Positions 27,701 to 34,675 of a DNA stretch of 64,000 nt are shown here, piece after piece. The notes beneath the pieces are model-generated. The model made no database searches. It saw only the letters and a program-made list of their open reading frames with translations, and was not told the DNA's origin. Made by a program: the position numbers and the translations under genes. The stretch's first letter is position 1. Every line of letters starts with the position of its first letter. The DNA lies in the IMG/VR virus record IMGVR_UViG_3300050120_000152, positions 1 to 64,000 of that record. One strand, written 5' to 3'.

Positions 27701-28201
27701 ATGTCTGATGAACCAAACGAAATTGCACTAGAAAAACAAAGTGCTTTAGAAAAATTTTTCGATCTTCCTGCGGCACCTTCAGCTAAACCATCTACTGAAG
27801 TTGCTAAACGTGAAATGAAACCAATACCTGCGGCTATAGCATCATATGATGAGCGAGATAATACTATCGAAGAGTTGTACACAAATATTCATGATACTGC
27901 TCTTGATACTCACGAACGTATTATGGATGATATTGATGATATTGACCCAAAATATGGTGCAAGAAATTATGAGGTTGCAGCAAATTATTTAACCATAGCC
28001 TTGAATGCTGCTGATAGACGTGCTAAACTCAAAGAGCATAAAGATAAATTGGTAAAACAAACTACCAAAGTGTCAACTACTAATATTATGGCTAAAACCA
28101 TTTCCATCAATACAACCGATTTAATAAAGCAATTATCTGCGGAAATTATTGAAGGTGAAATAGTAAGTGATACGAAACCACAGGAAAAAATTAATGAATA
28201 A
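27701..28201 (+). CDS. terS: Terminase small subunit (T4 gp16-like)
   Basis: 'ARNYEVAANYLTIAL.A' helix typical of the gp16 family; CATAAATA at 27673. Confidence 0.6.
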   Translation: MSDEPNEIALEKQSALEKFFDLPAAPSAKPSTEVAKREMKPIPAAIASYDERDNTIEELYTNIHDTALDTHERIMDDIDDIDPKYGARNYEVAANYLTIALNAADRRAKLKEHKDKLVKQTTKVSTTNIMAKTISINTTDLIKQLSAEIIEGEIVSDTKPQEKINE

Positions 28202-29894
28202 ACAAATATTAGCAAATAATACCGAAGACTTTATACTTAAGTATAAAGCAGCATTAAAAGCTAAATTGTCGAAAGAACAATTTTCGAAATATATGGGCTT
28301 GGACATTCGTACTGTAGATCGCAAAAAACAAAAAATCAAGCAATTTGTTGGTATGGATTTACCCGCGCTACCATTAAAAGATGTAGAACTACCAAAGGCA
28401 GTATTAGCCAATTTTGAAAGCCTCATTGCCGTAACGGCTGAATCTGTATTAAAGAGCGAGAAAGTCAATAGTTCAGATGACAAAACTACAATAAACATAC
28501 AGAAAAATAAAAGATATATCATTACTGCCGCACAGAATGCGACACCAGTTCATGTCGGTTTCATGAAATCTCTTAATACCTTTGCTGAACATAATGATGC
28601 GCAATTGTTGGTTATACCATATCGTTATAAGAATCCTACTTCAGTATGGAACACTAATGATAAAGCACAAGATTGGTGGCATGAAGCAGTCAAACCTTAC
28701 TTATTAGATAACGAATTGAAGGTAGGCAAACATATAAAAATTATGGGAAATATTAAAATGCAGCCAACCGCTGTTAGCCCATTATCAGGTTTTGATACGG
28801 TATCCGATTTAGATTCGGCAATATTCGGTCATCCTAATGTAGAGTGGAAAACTATTCCATCTATACCGGGAAAAACACCAAAAGTGCTATTAACCACGGG
28901 AGCAGTCACCGTTCCAAACTACACTGATACTAAAGCAGGGCATAAGGGGGCATTCCACCATATAATATCTGCCATCGTATTAGAAATAGATGAAGATGAA
29001 ATTTTTCACGTTCGTCATGTAACCGCCGATGCCAAAGGATCATTTTATGATCTAGATAAATTATATACTAATTTTGGTAGTGTGGTAACGACTACTACGC
29101 ACGGTGCATTAGCACTTATTGCGGGCGACATACATGCGGAAGTAATAGATGAGCCTACCCGAGATGCATTATTTTTAAATTTGGACTCTGTAGCTTCAGT
29201 ATTAAAACCCAAAGCATTTGTATTACATGATCTTATAGATTCTACAGCAAGAAATCACCATATTAGCCGTGATGGTATCGGTCGTTTTATACGACATTAT
29301 TTTGATAAAAATGATAATGTTGAAGACGGTTTACAAATTGCTGCCGATTTCATTGATAGTATTTCAAGACCAGATGCAACAAATGTCATCATACGGTCAA
29401 ACCACGATGAACATCTTGATAGATGGTTATCAGAAGCTGATCCAAAGACTGATCCAGAAAATGCAAAGTTTTATCATTATTTAAAATATAATCAGTATGA
29501 TGCTATCCAGAATGGAGAAGATTTCTCAGTATTAGAATTTTGGTGTAACAATCCAGATGATAATGCAGGTTTGGTTAATTTGGATAATACAGTATTTTTG
29601 AAGCGCAACGAATCCTATGAAATATCGGGGGTAGAAATATCATTACATGGCGATCAAGGCCCGAATGGTTCAAGAGGAAGCCTTCGTAACCTTTCGAGAA
29701 TGGGTCAGAAGCTTGTAATAGGTCATAGTCATACGCCGGGTATCATAAATGGATCGTATCAGGTGGGTACCACTTCGAAGCTTCAATTGGACTATAATAA
29801 AGGCCCAAGTTCGTGGCTTAATACAGCAGCAATCATTTATCCAAATGGAACAGTCACATTGATAAATGTTATAGATGGAAAATGGAAGTTATAA
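28194..29894 (+). CDS. T5 A1-like protein (HTH + metallophosphoesterase-type nuclease)
   Basis: RYIITAAQNATPV, GDIH, HDL.D, SNHDEHL, HGDQGPNGSRGS, GHSHTPGI, YNKGPSSW. Confidence 0.7.
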   Translation: MNKQILANNTEDFILKYKAALKAKLSKEQFSKYMGLDIRTVDRKKQKIKQFVGMDLPALPLKDVELPKAVLANFESLIAVTAESVLKSEKVNSSDDKTTINIQKNKRYIITAAQNATPVHVGFMKSLNTFAEHNDAQLLVIPYRYKNPTSVWNTNDKAQDWWHEAVKPYLLDNELKVGKHIKIMGNIKMQPTAVSPLSGFDTVSDLDSAIFGHPNVEWKTIPSIPGKTPKVLLTTGAVTVPNYTDTKAGHKGAFHHIISAIVLEIDEDEIFHVRHVTADAKGSFYDLDKLYTNFGSVVTTTTHGALALIAGDIHAEVIDEPTRDALFLNLDSVASVLKPKAFVLHDLIDSTARNHHISRDGIGRFIRHYFDKNDNVEDGLQIAADFIDSISRPDATNVIIRSNHDEHLDRWLSEADPKTDPENAKFYHYLKYNQYDAIQNGEDFSVLEFWCNNPDDNAGLVNLDNTVFLKRNESYEISGVEISLHGDQGPNGSRGSLRNLSRMGQKLVIGHSHTPGIINGSYQVGTTSKLQLDYNKGPSSWLNTAAIIYPNGTVTLINVIDGKWKL

Positions 29895-29920
29895 AAAAAG
29901 CCCCTTTCGGGGCTTTTTTA
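29893..29920. terminator. Bidirectional intrinsic terminator between convergent genes
   Basis: AAAAAAGCCCC-TTTC-GGGGCTTTTTT. Confidence 0.9.
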
Positions 29921-30010
29921 TTTTGACCAATCGTTAAACACGAAGGCACATATGATTATGATTACCAGAATGAGTAATCCTATTCCAAGAATACCAAGCA
30001 CAAGTCCCAT
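29918..30010 (-). CDS. 30-aa single-pass membrane peptide MGLVLGILGIGLLILVIIIICAFVFNDWSK (absent from the ORF track)
   Basis: TAATG coupling to the upstream ORF; stop lies in the terminator tail. Confidence 0.6.
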   Translation of the reverse strand: MGLVLGILGIGLLILVIIIICAFVFNDWSK

Positions 30011-30288
30011 TACTTAGATAAATCTGATTTTAGAGATTCTTCGACAACCTCATCAGCATCAAACTTCTTAGCTTCGCATTTGCCACATTCCCATTTGCCG
30101 GAATCCAAAATTGCTTGGCTAGTAGTGGAAGGTTCATCGCATGCATCACAATGACCTTTTACTAACTTATTTGTACCTTCCAAAATACTTTTGCTTTTTA
30201 ATTCAAAATATTGTGCATAAAATGATCTGGCAGCTACCATATCTTCATTGATGCATGCCTGCACAGTTTGTTTAAGTAAATCTTTCAT
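30010..30288 (-). CDS. Late small protein with CxxC..CxxC (candidate prohead core protein)
   Basis: Minus-strand TATAAATA at 30317-30324; 'KSKSILEG' motif. Confidence 0.6.
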   Translation of the reverse strand: MKDLLKQTVQACINEDMVAARSFYAQYFELKSKSILEGTNKLVKGHCDACDEPSTTSQAILDSGKWECGKCEAKKFDADEVVEESLKSDLSK

Positions 30289-30409
30289 TGTTAAAAATCT
30301 CTGTTATGTTAATCATTATTTATACCGGATACTGATTGTATGTTCGTTTTTTGTCGTGACATGTTTAAAAATGCATTATAAATATTTTTGATCAATATCA
30401 GAGATAATA

Positions 30410-31165
30410 ATGTCACACAACATAAAGTATACTCCAGAACGTATTAAAGAAATATCAAAATGCATGGATGATCCAATATATTTTATCAATACTTATGTAT
30501 ACATCCCTCACCCTAAACATGGTAAAATAAAATTTAAGTTATATGATTTTCAATATGAGTATATAAAACATATTGAAAATCATAAATTTACTATTGGATG
30601 GTGGTCGCGACAAACTGGGAAAACTTTAACCACACTACCATATATTTTATGGAATGTCATTTTTAATAGCAATAAAAATGCTTTCATTATGGCAGCTAGT
30701 TTACCGCAATCCAAGGAAATGATATTCATTTTACAATTTATGTTAAATAATCTTCCTGATTGGTTGAAGCCGAATATTGACAAAAGTAATTGGAACAAAA
30801 CTTCATTAGCTTTTGAAAATGGCAGTTTTATTCATGCTTTGACAAATTTTATTCAAATTAGAGGCAGAACAGTAGACTTAATATATTTTGATGAGTTTGC
30901 TTATTATGTAAATAAAGGTAATTTTGAGGATGTGTTTCCGGCACTTGCAATAAATTCTAAAGTGATTATAGCATCAACTGGAAAAAAAGATTCGCAGTTT
31001 AATAAATTATATTTTTATGTTTTGGATAATCGTTCAAGCCCATTTTCACTATTTTCAGTATCTTGGAATCAAGTTCCCGGTAGAGATTCTACATTTAAGA
31101 CATCTATGATAAATTTAATAGGTGAACATCAATGGAATGATGAATACGAAGTTGGTATAAGATAA
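30410..31165 (+). CDS. Terminase large subunit ATPase-only paralog
   Basis: SRQTGKT Walker A, IYFDEFAY Walker B; colinear with the first ~260 aa of the next gene; TATAAATA 30377-30384. Confidence 0.85.
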   Translation: MSHNIKYTPERIKEISKCMDDPIYFINTYVYIPHPKHGKIKFKLYDFQYEYIKHIENHKFTIGWWSRQTGKTLTTLPYILWNVIFNSNKNAFIMAASLPQSKEMIFILQFMLNNLPDWLKPNIDKSNWNKTSLAFENGSFIHALTNFIQIRGRTVDLIYFDEFAYYVNKGNFEDVFPALAINSKVIIASTGKKDSQFNKLYFYVLDNRSSPFSLFSVSWNQVPGRDSTFKTSMINLIGEHQWNDEYEVGIR

Positions 31166-31166
31166 A

Positions 31167-32033
31167 ATGGCAAGAAATCCTAGAGTCAAAAAACCATTTA
31201 TTCAAATGGAATATACCAAAGAAATGGTTGATGAAATACGTAAATGTATAGTCGATCCAGTATATTTTATCAATACTTATGTATATATTCTTCATCCTAA
31301 GCATGGTAGAATACGATTTAAGTTATATGATTTTCAAGAAGACATTGTTCGCACTTACCAAGCGAATCGTTGGTCTATCTCAAAAATTGCGCGTCAGTCG
31401 GGTAAAACTGAAACGACTTGTGCCTATTTGGCATGGTATGCCCTGTTCCATCCAGAGAAGACTATTCTTGTTGCTGCCAACAAATTGAGTAATGCCAAGG
31501 AAATCATCAGCCGTATTCAAGGCATCTATGAAGAATTGCCAGATTGGATAAAGCCGGGGATTGATGAAAGTGAATGGAACAAAACATCATTAGCTTTTGA
31601 AAATAAATCGAAGATCATGGCGCAAGCAACTTCCCAGAATACGGGACGTGGTTTTGCGATTTCATTATTATATTTGGACGAACTTGCGTTCGTTCCTCCA
31701 CATATTCAACAATTAATGTGGGCATCTATTCAGCCAGTATTGGCCACAGGTGGATCATGTATTATTAGCTCAACCCCAAATGGTTCTATTGACTTATATT
31801 CTCAATTATTCAGAGAAGCAGAAGCAGGATTAAGCGCATTCGCAGCCATTGACGTTAAGTGGTGGCAAGTACCGGGTAGAGATGAAGCATTCAAATTAGA
31901 ACAAATTGGTTTGATTGGTCAACGAAGATGGGATCAAGAATTTGAGTGCTGCGTATATGATTCTGCTATAAATATAATGGTAAATGGTATAATTAAAAGT
32001 ATTACCATTGGGGAATTATATGATTTATTTTGA
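31167..32033 (+). CDS. terL: Terminase large subunit N-fragment (ATPase) + 28-aa split-intein IntN
   Basis: ARQSGKT, LYLDELAF, SSTPNG, WDQEFE|CCVYDSAIN..ITIGELYDLF*. Confidence 0.92.
   Translation: MARNPRVKKPFIQMEYTKEMVDEIRKCIVDPVYFINTYVYILHPKHGRIRFKLYDFQEDIVRTYQANRWSISKIARQSGKTETTCAYLAWYALFHPEKTILVAANKLSNAKEIISRIQGIYEELPDWIKPGIDESEWNKTSLAFENKSKIMAQATSQNTGRGFAISLLYLDELAFVPPHIQQLMWASIQPVLATGGSCIISSTPNGSIDLYSQLFREAEAGLSAFAAIDVKWWQVPGRDEAFKLEQIGLIGQRRWDQEFECCVYDSAINIMVNGIIKSITIGELYDLF
31947..32030 (+). mobile_element. Split intein N-part (IntN, 28 aa)
   Basis: Block A C-x-x-x-D-S-x-I; resembles the short IntN of the AceL-TerL atypical split intein. Confidence 0.85.
31967..31974 (+). promoter_or_regulatory. 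Late promoter inside IntN for the downstream endonuclease-IntC-TerL-C ORF
   Basis: TATAAATA; SD GGGGA 32010-32014; ATG 32020. Confidence 0.65.
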
Positions 32034-34122
32034 AAAAAATAATGTTAAATATGTAATATCCAAAATTGATAATAAAAAATATTGTAAGACAAATGGCACA
32101 TTTACTAGACATTTGAAAACTAATAATTTAACAGAATTAGAATATTTTATAAAATATATAGATAGCCCTCAATATTGTCAATGTGGGGATATATGCAGTT
32201 TTAATAAAAGTGATTGGACGTTTAAAGAAATTTGTGGAATTAAATGTGCAGGATGGCTTAATTCAAAAAAATATCAAATTTCTTCTCCCGAATATAAACA
32301 ACGGTGGAAACGCCGTGCAATAGAAACGTACACAGAATTGCCTAGTGAACAACGTTCTCAAATAATACAAAAAAATAAAATTAAAGCGCCTATGGCGCGA
32401 AAAAAACGTATTGATACGTTAATAAACAAATACGGCAAAGAATGGTATAATAATCAAAAAGCATCAACCACTAAAAAAGCATTTACTAAACAACGATGGA
32501 AGCAAATCATTGATGATCAAAATTTATCAAAATTGAAAATATATGGCACATCTAAAATGTCTGAACCTGCTAGAGATAGGATAGTTCATCATGCTAGACA
32601 CATATTAAATCATCCTGATGTTAAAAGTGGAATGTCTAGATATTCCAAAATGGCAACAAATTTTTTTGCATCACTTAATATACCAGAAGCTTTATTTGGT
32701 GATAATGAATTTGTCATTCAACATATTAATGGATATGCTAGATATGATTTCAAGTATAAAAATAAAATAATAGAATTCAATGGCAATTACTGGCATGCTA
32801 ATCCAAATAAGTATGCGCATGATACAATCATATCATACCCAAGAAATAAAAAAATAAAAGCTTCTAATATATGGCACAAAGATGCTAAAAAAATTGAAAT
32901 AGCAAAAATGGCGGGCTATGAAGTATTGGTAATATGGGAGGATCAATTAAAGGGCGATATTAACAAACTAATAAAAAATATTAGACAGTGGTTAGTTGAC
33001 AGCCATGAATATAAAGAAAATAAAAATGCTGTTAAAATATTAACCCCACAGGGTTATTCTAAATTTAGTGGTATAAACAAACTTATTAAATTAGGTAGCA
33101 TAAAAATATTCTGTGATAATGGAACAGATATTGAATGTAGTTATAGCCATAAAATAAAAACTCAAGATGGGTATAAAATTGCTACAGACATTATATTATT
33201 AGATAGTATAACGACAGTAGATGGTGAACGTAAAGTTATCAATATTGAATGTTATCCTAATAAATTAGTAGATTTATATGATTTAATTGATGTAGAACTT
33301 GGTAATGAATATTATACTAATGGTATTTTAAGTCATAATTGCAAATTCTTAACATCTGAACATACCTTAATAGACCTTGATATGTTGGATCATGCTGAAA
33401 AAATGTTAGCTGGGCCAGCTATATCAGTGAAATCATTATATGATCAAATATTTTGGAAAGTACCAAACAAAATGGCTACATATATTGTAGGTGTCGATCC
33501 ATCTCAAGGTGTTGGAAACGATTTTAGTGTAATTCAGGTTTATGATTTTCCTAGTATGGAACAGGTAGCCGAATATCGCACCAATCAAGAATCTCCTGCC
33601 ATGTTATACTCGTATCTTAAATCATTATTAAAATTTTTAGAAAAGAATGTCAAATATGTTTATTATTCTGTAGAAAATAATGCATTGGGTCAAGCTATTA
33701 TTGCCTTATATGAAGCTGATACTAATCCGTTGGAAAAAGCTATTTTCATGTCAGAAGAAGGTAAAGATACATTGGGGTATAATTCTAATATAAAGAGTAA
33801 AAACAAATCATTAATTGCTTTCAAGGAAATGTTTGAACGTGGTCAATTAAAAGTAAACTCGCCCATTTTAATTAAAGAATTAAAAACTTTGGTAAGAAAA
33901 GAGAATACATTCAAGGCTCAGATAGGTTCTACAGATGACTGCGTATTCGCTTCATTGATCGTTATACGAATGGTAGAAGATATGGCCGATTCTGATATGG
34001 TAGCATATAATAAATTATATTCATTTGAAAATGTTAAGGTAGATAATTGGAAAATAGAATCTAATGACGATTTTAATGAAAACTGGGATAATGATGGATA
34101 CATGCCTTTCAGCATTGGATAA
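32020..34122 (+). CDS. terL: Fusion: Vsr-like homing endonuclease (~32020-33000) + IntC (~33007-33339) + TerL C-fragment (RNase H-like nuclease, 33340-34122)
   Basis: YDFKYKNKIIEFNGNYWHANP..KD..K..GYEVLVIWE; KILTPQGYSKFSGI..SHK..LYDLIDVE..YYTNGILSHN|C; VGVDPSQGVGNDFS, VENN, DDCVFA. Confidence 0.88.
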   Translation: MIYFEKNNVKYVISKIDNKKYCKTNGTFTRHLKTNNLTELEYFIKYIDSPQYCQCGDICSFNKSDWTFKEICGIKCAGWLNSKKYQISSPEYKQRWKRRAIETYTELPSEQRSQIIQKNKIKAPMARKKRIDTLINKYGKEWYNNQKASTTKKAFTKQRWKQIIDDQNLSKLKIYGTSKMSEPARDRIVHHARHILNHPDVKSGMSRYSKMATNFFASLNIPEALFGDNEFVIQHINGYARYDFKYKNKIIEFNGNYWHANPNKYAHDTIISYPRNKKIKASNIWHKDAKKIEIAKMAGYEVLVIWEDQLKGDINKLIKNIRQWLVDSHEYKENKNAVKILTPQGYSKFSGINKLIKLGSIKIFCDNGTDIECSYSHKIKTQDGYKIATDIILLDSITTVDGERKVINIECYPNKLVDLYDLIDVELGNEYYTNGILSHNCKFLTSEHTLIDLDMLDHAEKMLAGPAISVKSLYDQIFWKVPNKMATYIVGVDPSQGVGNDFSVIQVYDFPSMEQVAEYRTNQESPAMLYSYLKSLLKFLEKNVKYVYYSVENNALGQAIIALYEADTNPLEKAIFMSEEGKDTLGYNSNIKSKNKSLIAFKEMFERGQLKVNSPILIKELKTLVRKENTFKAQIGSTDDCVFASLIVIRMVEDMADSDMVAYNKLYSFENVKVDNWKIESNDDFNENWDNDGYMPFSIG

Positions 34123-34675
34123 TGATAAATATATTATCGGAGCTTGCACCTTGAAAGAATATCAGTTATTATTAGAACTCAGCTATTTTGACCTTGAAGG
34201 TAGAACAAATTCTATCATGGGTCACGAAAGAACAGAAAATTCCAATAAAGTAAAATTGGATAATATGACCTTCATTCCAATGGCTAGTAGTGGTAATCTT
34301 AAAATAGGCTCTAATACTACCTCTAATAACGGGCATGATTATTGGAGTACATTATTATTTGATAATATCACCTATCTTTCCGATGAAGATCAAAAAGACC
34401 CGCAAGCATATACATTCACAGGTTCAGATAATACTGAATATCAAATCAAGCGTGTTCCGCGTAATGCTAATGTCAAAGTGAATTGCTCATGTTTAGACTT
34501 TCACTATAGATTTGCTGTATGGGATAATAAATTTAAAGCATTAGACGGTAATCCGCCAGCACCTTACATCAAACGTTCAAACCGCCCATCAGTAAACCCT
34601 ATGCAAACTCCCGGTTTATGTAAACATCTGATAAAATTAATGAATGACCTAAAAGCTCAAAATTTCTTCATTTAA
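34064..34675 (+). CDS. SWIM-type zinc-finger protein (true start uncertain, probably downstream)
   Basis: VNCSCLDF...PGLCKHL. Confidence 0.65.
   Translation: MTILMKTGIMMDTCLSALDNDKYIIGACTLKEYQLLLELSYFDLEGRTNSIMGHERTENSNKVKLDNMTFIPMASSGNLKIGSNTTSNNGHDYWSTLLFDNITYLSDEDQKDPQAYTFTGSDNTEYQIKRVPRNANVKVNCSCLDFHYRFAVWDNKFKALDGNPPAPYIKRSNRPSVNPMQTPGLCKHLIKLMNDLKAQNFFI

What the first reader, a model, noticed from the sequence alone, without database searches (positions are those of the whole stretch)
30410..31165. Tandem ATPase-only terminase paralog that stops at the intein insertion site
Seen: the 251-aa ORF is colinear with TerL-N (DP.YFINTYVYI.HPKHG.I.FKLYDFQ; WNKTSLAFEN; W.QVPGRD..FK), keeps Walker A/B, and ends WNDEYE-VGIR*. 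That is the position where TerL-N has WDQEFE|intein, but without the intein Cys. It has its own late promoter. Inference: it cannot be spliced to the nuclease half, so it could be a nuclease-free motor subunit (mixed ring), a regulator or decoy, or a non-covalent partner of unspliced TerL-C. The shared end point suggests the duplication is tied to the fracture event.
Basis: partly seen in the sequence, partly recalled or inferred. Interest (0 to 1): 0.7.

Follow-up and report, generated by a model that had tools for sequence, protein, structure and literature searches.

The report
ATPase-only terminase paralog upstream of terL
The 251-residue gene is real, but it belongs to a fast-evolving family of nuclease-free copies of the phage DNA-packaging ATPase that sit just upstream of the terminase gene in many related giant phages, most of which have no intein, so it was not made by the intein that splits this phage's terminase.

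Summary
Observation confirmed. Window 30410-31165 encodes a 251-aa protein 42% identical to, and colinear with, the ATPase half of the adjacent split terL. Walker A, Walker B and the C-motif are intact. It folds confidently as a T4 gp17-type ATPase domain, and an independent 157x assembly has the same sequence.

The link to the intein is not supported. The same kind of gene (246-267 aa, ending 3-15 residues after the E-Y/F-E-C motif, abutting or overlapping the terL start) lies upstream of intact, intein-free terL in at least five relatives that keep the window's gene order or gene set (L160, L169, L172, L174, Xanthomonas phage Xoo-sp13). The same layout is seen on two short contigs (L179, L180). 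The shared end point is the ATPase/nuclease domain boundary.

The family is patchy: the closest relative, which is a complete genome, lacks it. It is hypervariable: 42% identity between two phages whose TerL is 90% identical. About half its members have lost catalytic residues but keep the fold. ATPase-only copies arose more than once.

It is co-transcribed with terL from a T4-type late promoter. A separate small-terminase candidate exists, so it is not TerS.

Most likely it is an accessory TerL-like subunit or regulator. A TerL mimic or decoy remains possible.

The parts
30377..30384 (+). TATAAATA, a T4-type late-promoter-like motif 26 nt upstream of the paralog's ATG. It probably drives the paralog and terL-N as one transcript.
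   Evidence: 7 of 17 + strand copies in the window lie 21-30 nt before the ATG of an ORF of at least 60 aa. L172 has TATAAATA before its paralog. L169 and L174 have cATAAATA there. L074 (TATAAATA) and L073 (cATAAATA), which lack the paralog, have it before terL. The overall count is not enriched (23 against 17.4 +/- 4.1).
30410..31165 (+). ATPase-only TerL paralog, 251 aa. It is a complete gp17-type ATPase domain (Q-motif LYDFQ, Walker A SRQTGKT, Walker B LIYFDE, C-motif AST) with no nuclease domain and no intein fragment. It ends ..WNDEYE-VGIR*.
31167..31946 (+). terL N-extein (ATPase domain of the true large terminase, 260 aa, ends ..WDQEFE). It starts 1 nt after the paralog's stop codon.
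   Evidence: It is 77% identical to the ATPase part of the uninterrupted 524-aa TerL of L073.
31947..32033 (+). N-terminal fragment of an atypically split intein (28 aa, CCVYDSAINIMVNGIIKSITIGELYDLF) plus stop codon. The first residue may be off by one.
   Evidence: L131 has a homologous short N-intein fragment. L154 ends its terL-N ORF with a similar short tail, read by eye. The insertion point is set by comparison with intein-free L073.
32020..33339 (+). Vsr-like homing-endonuclease domain fused in frame to the C-terminal intein fragment, which ends ..GILSHN. The ORF overlaps the terL-N/IntN ORF by 14 nt in another frame.
   Evidence: 37% identity to the free-standing endonuclease of L131, with the IIEFNG.YWHA motif. 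(the C-intein fragment matches the consensus atypical split intein CatC, 6dsl_B, E 5e-13)..
33340..34122 (+). terL C-extein (nuclease domain, starts CKFLTSEHTL..) plus stop codon.
   Evidence: (Terminase_6C, E 5e-10). It is 68% identical to the C-terminal part of L073 TerL.
27701..28201 (+). Candidate small terminase subunit (166 aa). Genes of like size at the same position occur in relatives with and without the paralog. It is listed because it shows the paralog is not the TerS.
   Evidence: phrog_445 'terminase small subunit', E 3.3e-6, 127 of 143 profile positions. Same-position genes by gene order: L073 3379-3891, L172 3177-3677.

Best explanation
**What it is (high confidence, about 0.85)**
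- It is a member of a recurrent family of partial tandem duplicates of terL.
- These duplicates keep only the ATPase domain and sit directly upstream of terL in T4-like jumbo phages of the XacN1/Xoo-sp13/RAS14 group.
- The family is independent of the split intein and homing endonuclease now inside this phage's terL, and most of it is probably older than that insertion.
- The truncation point is the ATPase/nuclease domain boundary. The intein family also inserts there, at the conserved E-Y/F-E|C motif.

**How it is expressed (inferred from sequence)**
- It is the first gene of the late terL transcript.
- Its stop abuts or overlaps the terL start, so it is made together with TerL.

**What it does (inferred, about 0.4)**
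- It is an accessory, non-nuclease, TerL-shaped subunit that joins or regulates the terminase.
- Examples would be occupying positions in, or docking on, the TerL assembly, or donating the conserved P-loop Arg-Gln.
- The family selectively keeps the fold, the adenine-binding Q-motif and R-Q-x-G, while hydrolysis residues are dispensable.
- In this phage all hydrolysis residues are intact, so this copy may still bind and hydrolyse ATP.

The confidence value given for this explanation (0.5) is for the whole statement, identity and mechanism together.
For: **Shown**
- Homology, intact motifs and a confident gp17-ATPase fold.
- The same gene with the same end point abuts or overlaps intact terL in L160, L169, L172, L174 and L179. 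In L180 and Xoo-sp13 it lies 11-19 nt upstream. It lies next to broken terL in the window, L154, L159 and L131.
- An exhaustive search of 1.84 billion representative proteins finds about 30 such 245-270-aa proteins. Nothing there is more than 41% identical to this one; the nearest sequence is its own TerL-N at 42-43%.
- Stop/start spacing ranges from 1 nt apart to an 11-nt overlap. In L172 and L174 the terL ribosome-binding site lies inside the paralog's tail codons.
- The late-promoter motif precedes the paralog where it is present, and terL where it is absent.
- At 39 TerL-conserved columns, 31 paralogs keep structural, Q-motif and R-Q-x-G residues at 87% or more. The Walker A Lys falls to 48%, the catalytic Glu to 45% and the C-motif Thr to 61%.
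- Protein-level constraint persists. Between L172 and L174 the paralog has dN 0.53 against background dS 0.8-1.8, so omega is roughly 0.2-0.4. The frame is open in all members except L131 copy2.
- The AU test rejects a single origin of all ATPase-only copies (p 0.008). L131 copy2 plus P0047 is sister to its own TerL-N (96/93). Repeated origin argues that such a product is useful.
Against: - There is no direct evidence that it binds TerL, the portal or DNA. The one complex prediction gave no answer.
- The gene is dispensable for packaging. The complete 350-kb genome of the closest relative (L073) and RAS14 each have only one TerL-type ATPase.
- A core motor partner of a 90%-conserved TerL would not be expected to be only 42% identical between the same two phages. 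That speed fits an arms-race or low-constraint gene better.
- The tree cannot place this copy. Neither 'duplicate of its own terL' (p 0.33) nor 'ortholog of the L160 paralog' (p 0.23) is rejected. Its age relative to the intein is therefore inferred from gene order, not shown.
- No RNA or protein data exist for this metagenomic phage.
Confidence: 0.5

Rival explanations
1. TerL mimic in a conflict. The ATPase-only copy is shaped like TerL's ATPase domain and is made with TerL. It would titrate or mislead something that binds TerL. That could be a host immune sensor that recognises the large terminase (Avs1-3 type STAND proteins), or the packaging machinery of a co-infecting rival phage. It would evolve fast for that reason.
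For: - Distribution is patchy among close relatives.
- It diverges extremely fast next to conserved neighbours: 42% against 80-94% identity between L172 and L174.
- The fold is kept while catalysis is often lost.
- Such copies arose more than once.
- It lies in a variable slot between the ~565-aa gene and terL that holds different small genes in different relatives.
- The TerL ATPase domain is a documented target. Avs1-3 sense the large terminase (PMC13581612). KpAvs2 is predicted to bind the TerL ATPase domain, and TerL co-purifies with it (PMC11564622).
Against: - No such decoy has been described in the papers I searched.
- A protein that binds an Avs sensor could activate it rather than block it.
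- Overall omega is below 1, and no paralog-specific conserved surface was found.
- The host and its defences are unknown.
Confidence: 0.22
2. Mostly a translated leader. The duplicate is kept open because translating it delivers ribosomes to the overlapping terL start (translational coupling) and avoids polarity. The protein itself has little or no function and drifts.
For: - Stop and start abut or overlap in most members. In L172 and L174 the terL ribosome-binding site lies inside the paralog's last codons.
- Between L172 and L174, nucleotide similarity survives only in the first ~90 nt and the last ~40 nt of the paralog.
- GC is 28.7% (third positions 21.5%) against 38.3% for terL-N, as expected for weakly constrained DNA in an AT-rich phage.
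- Catalytic residues are lost in about half the members.
Against: - More than 20 fold-determining and nucleotide-pocket residues stay at 87-100% across 31 paralogs that are otherwise saturated.
- The AF2 model is very confident, and omega is roughly 0.2-0.4 rather than 1.
- Relatives manage terL expression with no such leader (L073, L074).
- This does not explain why a 250-codon leader, rather than a short one, arose more than once.
Confidence: 0.15
3. The paralog was created by, or is functionally tied to, the intein/endonuclease fracture of terL. It would be a remnant of homing-associated repair, a nuclease-free motor subunit compensating for inefficient trans-splicing, or a partner of unspliced TerL-C.
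For: - Four loci combine an ATPase-only copy with a broken terL (window, L154, L159, L131). In the window, L154 and L131 the break includes an intein fragment at this same site.
- The window copy, L154 copyB and L131 copy2 have Val where the +1 Cys would be.
- L073 and L074, the closest TerL relatives in the tree (L172 and L174 are about equally similar by identity), lack both the intein and the paralog.
- Three of the four copies beside broken terL keep all catalytic residues.
Against: - At least seven loci have the paralog with an uninterrupted terL.
- Several loci have an intein at this site and no paralog within the available flanks: L075, L117, L119, L123, L127, L132, L156.
- Catalytically intact paralogs also occur beside intact terL (P0124, P0006), so the small-sample association disappears.
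- Most members extend past the intein site into C-extein-like residues.
Confidence: 0.06

Closest known systems
Large terminase TerL of T4-like phages (gp17), ATPase domain N360 (PDB 2o0h; Pfam Terminase_6N, PF03237)
   Same: It has the same fold (TM 0.87) and the same motifs: Q-motif, Walker A with the Arg-Gln, Walker B Asp-Glu and C-motif. It has the same length as the isolated gp17 ATPase domain.
   Different: - It has no nuclease domain (no Terminase_6C).
- It is a separate gene next to a true terL.
- It evolves several times faster than TerL.
- Half of its family has lost the catalytic Lys or Glu, which 100 of 104 TerLs keep.
Fractured terL genes with atypically split inteins and a Vsr-like homing endonuclease (Dassa et al. 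2009, PMC2677866; consensus 'Cat' split intein, PDB 6dsl)
   Same: The neighbouring terL of this window is such a gene. It has a 28-aa N-intein fragment, a Vsr-like endonuclease and a C-intein fragment that matches CatC at E 5e-13. The break is at the E-F-E|C site.
   Different: - The paralog itself has no intein fragment and no endonuclease.
- It occurs mostly beside unbroken terL.
- In the window the endonuclease is fused in frame to the C-intein fragment and TerL-C, instead of standing free as in L131 and the published loci.
Small terminase subunit TerS (T4 gp16 position; Xoo-sp13 QDJ96428.1 is annotated this way)
   Same: The gene lies immediately upstream of terL and is coupled to it, as g16 is to g17 in T4. 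One isolate's family member carries the label 'terminase small subunit'.
   Different: - It is homologous to the TerL ATPase domain, not to any TerS.
- A separate TerS candidate exists in the window at 27701-28201.
- The Xoo-sp13 label is probably a misannotation.
Catalytically inactive paralogous subunits of ATPase assemblies (F1 alpha beside beta, clamp-loader delta/delta'); comparison from general knowledge
   Same: It is a paralog of the catalytic subunit that keeps the fold and parts of the nucleotide pocket while losing hydrolysis residues. It is encoded next to the active subunit.
   Different: - Those subunits are essential, universally present and slowly evolving.
- This family is patchy and hypervariable.
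- No hetero-oligomer has been shown.

Membership tests
TerL ATPase domain (Terminase_6N / T4 gp17 N-domain) | Significant sequence match to the family profile | tested here: met
   PF03237 E 3.3e-10, 40.4 bits (cut-off 22). phrog_5989 'terminase large subunit' E 6.9e-43. T4 gp17 E 6.5e-27.
TerL ATPase domain (Terminase_6N / T4 gp17 N-domain) | gp17-type ATPase fold | tested here: met
   AF2 pLDDT 94.9, pTM 0.92. Foldseek best hit 2o0h, E 2.8e-22, TM 0.87.
TerL ATPase domain (Terminase_6N / T4 gp17 N-domain) | Catalytic motifs: Walker A G-K-[ST] with preceding R-Q, Walker B D-E, C-motif S/T-T, adenine-binding Q | tested here: met
   SRQTGKT, LIYFDE, AST and LYDFQ are present. Activity itself was not tested.
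Functional large terminase (TerL holoenzyme) | C-terminal RNase H-like nuclease domain (Terminase_6C) in the same polypeptide or joined by splicing | tested here: not met
   The ORF stops 4 residues after the domain boundary. There is no Terminase_6C hit, no intein fragment and no Cys at the junction.
N-half of an intein-fractured terL | N-extein followed by an N-intein fragment starting with Cys | tested here: not met
   The tail is VGIR*. The true terL-N next door has the 28-aa CCVYDS..LYDLF fragment.
   It is 251 aa and ends 4 residues after E-Y-E. For comparison: P0072 ..EYEGEFIEQL, P0029 and P0023 ..ECEWVEEDVS, P0140 ..ECEFVVEADGG, Xoo-sp13 ..DFELVSSK.
TerS-like .. ~565-aa gene .. terL .. 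gp32 .. RecA-like neighbourhood | tested here: met
   Gap of 1 nt in the window. The range across members is from an 11-nt overlap to 19 nt apart. The gene order is shared with L160, L169, L172 and L174.
   The careful tree puts it with P0140/P0160 (89/90) in an unresolved set of long branches. AU tests reject neither that nor an origin from its own terL. Variable sites are saturated.
Small terminase subunit (TerS) | Homology to a TerS family | tested here: not met
   There are no TerS hits; all hits are to TerL families. A different gene (27701-28201) matches phrog_445 TerS. PF11053 is absent from the genome.

The most novel reading that the evidence does not exclude
Jumbo T4-like phages have repeatedly evolved a hypervariable, nuclease-free mimic of the TerL ATPase domain that is co-translated with TerL. 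It would act either as a decoy or shield against host sensors that recognise the large terminase, or as a non-catalytic or alternative subunit in a mixed packaging-motor ring. In this phage, where TerL must be assembled by protein trans-splicing and the paralog keeps every catalytic residue, it would be an active second ATPase of the motor.
Probability: 0.2. Interest if true: 0.75.

Novelty: new variant of a known kind. Interest (0 to 1): 0.5.

Why it matters
**Practical consequences**
- Terminase genes are the standard marker for classifying phages and for calling phage contigs. An unrecognised, widespread family of ATPase-only terL look-alikes causes misannotation. One isolate's copy is labelled 'small terminase'; others are labelled 'large terminase' or 'terminase family protein'.
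- These look-alikes can also distort terL phylogenies through their long branches.

**Biological interest**
- The gene is dispensable, yet it arose more than once.
- It keeps the TerL fold while shedding catalysis.
- It diverges about 5-15 times faster in amino-acid sequence than its neighbours.
- That makes it a good candidate for either a new kind of packaging-motor regulator or a player in phage-host or phage-phage conflict centred on the terminase.

**Lesson for this finding**
- The apparent link to the intein is a domain-boundary coincidence.

Tried and rejected
- **Assembly artefact or duplicated read-through.** Rejected. An independent contig at depth 157 is identical, and a second sample holds identical fragments.
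- **A closer homologue elsewhere, to date the copy or compute dN/dS.** None exists. The best non-self hits are 39-41% identical in 1.84 billion representative proteins and in IMG/VR. Public runs carry no variants of it.
- **Phylogeny to decide between an in-lineage duplicate and an old paralog family.** Unresolved.
- **Homing-repair relic of the recipient's own gene.** Rejected. The split terL, not the paralog, matches the genome backbone: 77% and 68% identity to L073 TerL against 60-68% for flanking genes, while the paralog is 41%.
- **Paralog tail VGIR derived from a duplicated terL 5' leader.** No similarity to the L073 or L074 leaders was seen.
- **Catalytically intact paralogs only beside broken terL.** A first sample suggested it (3 of 4 against 0 of 5). 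It was rejected after P0124 and P0006, both intact in motifs, were found beside intact terL.
- **RAS14's 161-aa and XacN1's 242-aa genes upstream of terL as degenerate family members.** There is no support. hmmsearch gave E 0.43 for the RAS14 gene and no hit for XacN1 ORF256; hhalign on the RAS14 gene gave probability 0.1%.
- **The paralog as the phage's TerS.** Rejected.
- **Search for more loci with this endonuclease type.** The single-sequence scan found nothing and the alignment scan found only 3 loci.
- **Complex prediction of a relative's paralog with its intact TerL (L174).** No verdict, so it is not evidence either way.
- **T4 gp16-type TerS by Pfam PF11053 in the genome.** No match.

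Full report
**What is there**

The window is the first 64 kb of a 340,344-bp IMG/VR phage genome with direct terminal repeats. It comes from a peat metagenome. The region reads as follows:
- 30410-31165: a 251-aa ORF.
- 31167-32033, one base later: a 288-aa ORF. It is the terL ATPase half (260 aa, ending WDQEFE) followed by a 28-aa N-intein fragment.
- 32020-34122, overlapping in another frame: an ORF that fuses a Vsr-like homing endonuclease, a C-intein fragment (ending SHN) and the terL nuclease half (starting CKFL).

The C-intein fragment matches the consensus atypically split intein CatC (6dsl_B, E 5e-13). The neighbouring terL is therefore a 'fractured gene' of the kind described by Dassa et al. 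2009 (PMC2677866).

**Checking the observation**

- The 251-aa protein is 42% identical (E 4e-72) to, and colinear with, the terL ATPase half.
- It hits Pfam Terminase_6N and T4 gp17 (E 6.5e-27).
- It gives an AF2 model with pLDDT 94.9. The best structural match is the isolated gp17 ATPase domain 2o0h (TM 0.87).
- The Q-motif, Walker A (SRQTGKT), Walker B (LIYFDE) and C-motif (AST) are present.
- An independently assembled contig at depth 157 is identical across 29600-34400. A second sample holds identical pieces. The arrangement, including the frame break inside the intein, is real.
- The ORF ends four residues after the intein insertion point defined by the intein-free relative L073 (WDQEYE-CQFLTT). 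It has Val in place of the +1 Cys.

**The decisive comparison**

Scanning IMG/VR with the terL ATPase half found the nearest relatives. L073 is a complete 350-kb genome with 77% identity in the ATPase half. It has the same gene order around terL but a single uninterrupted 524-aa terL, no intein and no paralog anywhere in the genome. L074 and Stenotrophomonas phage RAS14 are alike in this. That looked like support for a link between paralog and intein.

An exhaustive HMMER search of 1.84 billion representative proteins changed the picture. It showed about 30 proteins of 245-270 aa that cover the whole ATPase domain and stop 3-15 residues after the same E-Y/F-E-C motif. I looked up their contigs:
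- L160 (P0072), L169 (P0140), L172 (P0029, on a 368-kb contig) and L174 (P0023) share the window's neighbourhood. The order is DnaB helicase, small genes, a ~565-aa gene, a variable slot, terL, a ~170-aa gene, gp32, a RecA-like gene and a UvsW-like helicase.
- Each has the ATPase-only gene directly upstream of, and overlapping by 4-11 nt, an uninterrupted 516-524-aa terL.
- L179 and L180 show the same pair.
- The cultured Xanthomonas phage Xoo-sp13 has one too (28% identity, E 3e-23, same end point). It is annotated 'terminase small subunit'.

Most members also continue past the intein site into C-x-F-[ILV] residues that correspond to the start of the nuclease half. An N-half of a fractured gene would lack these. 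The shared end point is the ATPase/nuclease domain boundary, where this intein family also inserts.

Paralogs also occur beside broken terL: the window, L154 with two tandem copies, L159, and L131 where the copy lies downstream. Several terL genes with an intein at this site have no paralog within the available flanks. There is no dependence either way.

**Origin**

- Each copy is about as similar to its own TerL (33-43%; 28% in Xoo-sp13) as to other paralogs (25-42%).
- The trees place L131 copy2 plus its intact ortholog P0047 as sister to L131's own TerL (96/93). L154 copyB falls near its own TerL (80/95).
- The window copy falls, with P0140/P0160 (89/90), into an unresolved set of long branches.
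- AU tests reject neither an origin from the window's own terL (p 0.33) nor a clade with the L160 paralog (p 0.23).
- They do reject a single origin for all ATPase-only proteins (p 0.008), with the caveat that the group was defined after seeing the tree.
- So partial tandem duplication of the terL 5' part has happened more than once. The age of the window's copy is inferred from gene order, not shown.

**How it evolves**

L172 and L174 are close relatives: TerL 89-90%, neighbours 80-94% amino-acid identity, background dS 0.8-1.8. Their paralogs are only 42-43% identical (dN 0.53 against 0.03-0.12). Nucleotide similarity survives only at the two ends of the gene. That gives an overall omega of roughly 0.2-0.4. 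The gene is fast, but not neutral.

Across 39 columns conserved in 104 TerLs, 31 paralogs behave as follows:
- Structural residues, the adenine-binding Gln and R-Q-x-G of the P-loop are kept at 87-100%.
- The Walker A Lys drops from 99% to 48%.
- The Walker B Asp drops to 77%.
- The catalytic Glu drops from 100% to 45%.
- The C-motif Thr drops to 61%.
- No paralog-specific conserved residues appeared.

The window's copy is among the minority that keeps every catalytic residue. Its GC content is 28.7% against 38.3% for terL-N.

**Expression context**

- TATAAATA, the T4 late-promoter consensus (general knowledge), lies 26 nt before the paralog's ATG.
- In the window, 7 of 17 + strand copies lie 21-30 nt before an ORF start, although the total count is not enriched.
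- The motif, exact or with one mismatch, precedes the paralog in L169, L172 and L174, and precedes terL in L073 and L074.
- No promoter-like motif or spacer separates the paralog from terL.
- In L172 and L174 the terL ribosome-binding site and ATG lie inside the paralog's last codons.
- The paralog is therefore the first cistron of the late terL transcript. This is inferred from sequence.

**Function**

- It is not the small terminase. It is homologous only to TerL families. A separate gene at 27701-28201 matches a TerS family (phrog_445, E 3e-6). Genes of like size lie at the same position in relatives with and without the paralog.
- It is dispensable for packaging as such (L073, RAS14).
- My best guess, at about 0.4, is an accessory TerL-shaped subunit or regulator acting with the terminase. 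In this phage it may be a working ATPase.
- A TerL mimic in host-phage or phage-phage conflict (about 0.2) fits the speed and patchiness, and the known sensing of TerL by Avs proteins (PMC13581612, PMC11564622). I found no precedent.
- A mostly translational-coupling role (about 0.15) fits the overlaps, but not the conserved fold residues.
- The one complex prediction gave no verdict.

**Verdict**

The intein-linked interpretation is not. What remains is a previously unremarked, misannotated, recurrent and hypervariable family of nuclease-free terL paralogs. That is of moderate interest.

Noticed in passing
window 31947-34122: The split intein's Vsr-like homing endonuclease is fused in frame to the C-intein fragment and the TerL nuclease half (one ORF from ATG 32020). 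In L131 and in published fractured genes the endonuclease is a free-standing ORF. The ORF overlaps the terL-N/IntN ORF by 14 nt in another frame.
   Followed up: partly
window 31967-31974: A TATAAATA late-promoter-like motif lies inside the N-intein coding sequence, 46 nt upstream of the ATG of the endonuclease/IntC/TerL-C ORF. It may be a promoter brought in with the mobile element.
   Followed up: no
L172:6001-6768 against L174:407-1183: Two phages with 83-94% identical neighbouring proteins have paralogs that are only 42-43% identical. Only the first ~90 nt and the last ~40 nt are alignable as DNA. Synonymous-site identity in shared codons is also lower (0.48 against 0.57-0.73).
   Followed up: partly
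L154:4528-10822: A Logan contig has two tandem degenerate ATPase-only copies upstream of terL. The first (324 aa) appears by eye to have a ribbon-helix-helix-like N-terminus (weak phrog_876 repressor hit, E 1e-4) and G-G-T instead of G-K-T. Its terL also has a LAGLIDADG intein in the C-motif, plus the split intein with a DUF7487 endonuclease.
   Followed up: partly
L131:3937-4814: The ATPase-only copy lies downstream of the fractured terL and is broken by a frameshift just after Walker A. An intact ortholog (P0047, 65% identical) exists on another contig.
   Followed up: partly
L175:4247-4942 (Xanthomonas phage Xoo-sp13, QDJ96428.1): The gene annotated 'terminase small subunit' is a degenerate TerL ATPase-domain paralog (Walker A R-E-S-G-T-S, Walker B L-D). 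The label is probably wrong.
   Followed up: yes
L156:1744-10029 (327-kb contig): terL appears to be interrupted at three places (near Walker A, near residue 170 and at the E-F-E|C site with an endonuclease). No ATPase-only paralog is nearby.
   Followed up: no
window 34064-34675 and its counterparts at the same position (L073 7598-8113, L172 8351-8863): The gene just downstream of terL has a C-x-C ... C-x-H pattern (CSCLDFHYRF..CKHLIKLM) that resembles a SWIM zinc finger. It has no useful family hit.
   Followed up: no
window 28167-29894: A 575-aa gene lies between the TerS candidate and terL, with counterparts in all relatives. By eye it has metallophosphoesterase-like motifs (GDIHAE, NHDEH, GHSHTPG). 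Pfam gives no hit.
   Followed up: no
P0008, P0009, P0011, P0012, P0013 (285-311 aa): A separate clade of ATPase-only TerL-like proteins has the Walker A Lys replaced (SRQTG[LMI][ST]) and Walker B reading Q-D, N-D, D-D or L-D. One is labelled as from a Pacearchaeota MAG, and its longest contig is 425 kb. Their contexts were not examined.
   Followed up: no
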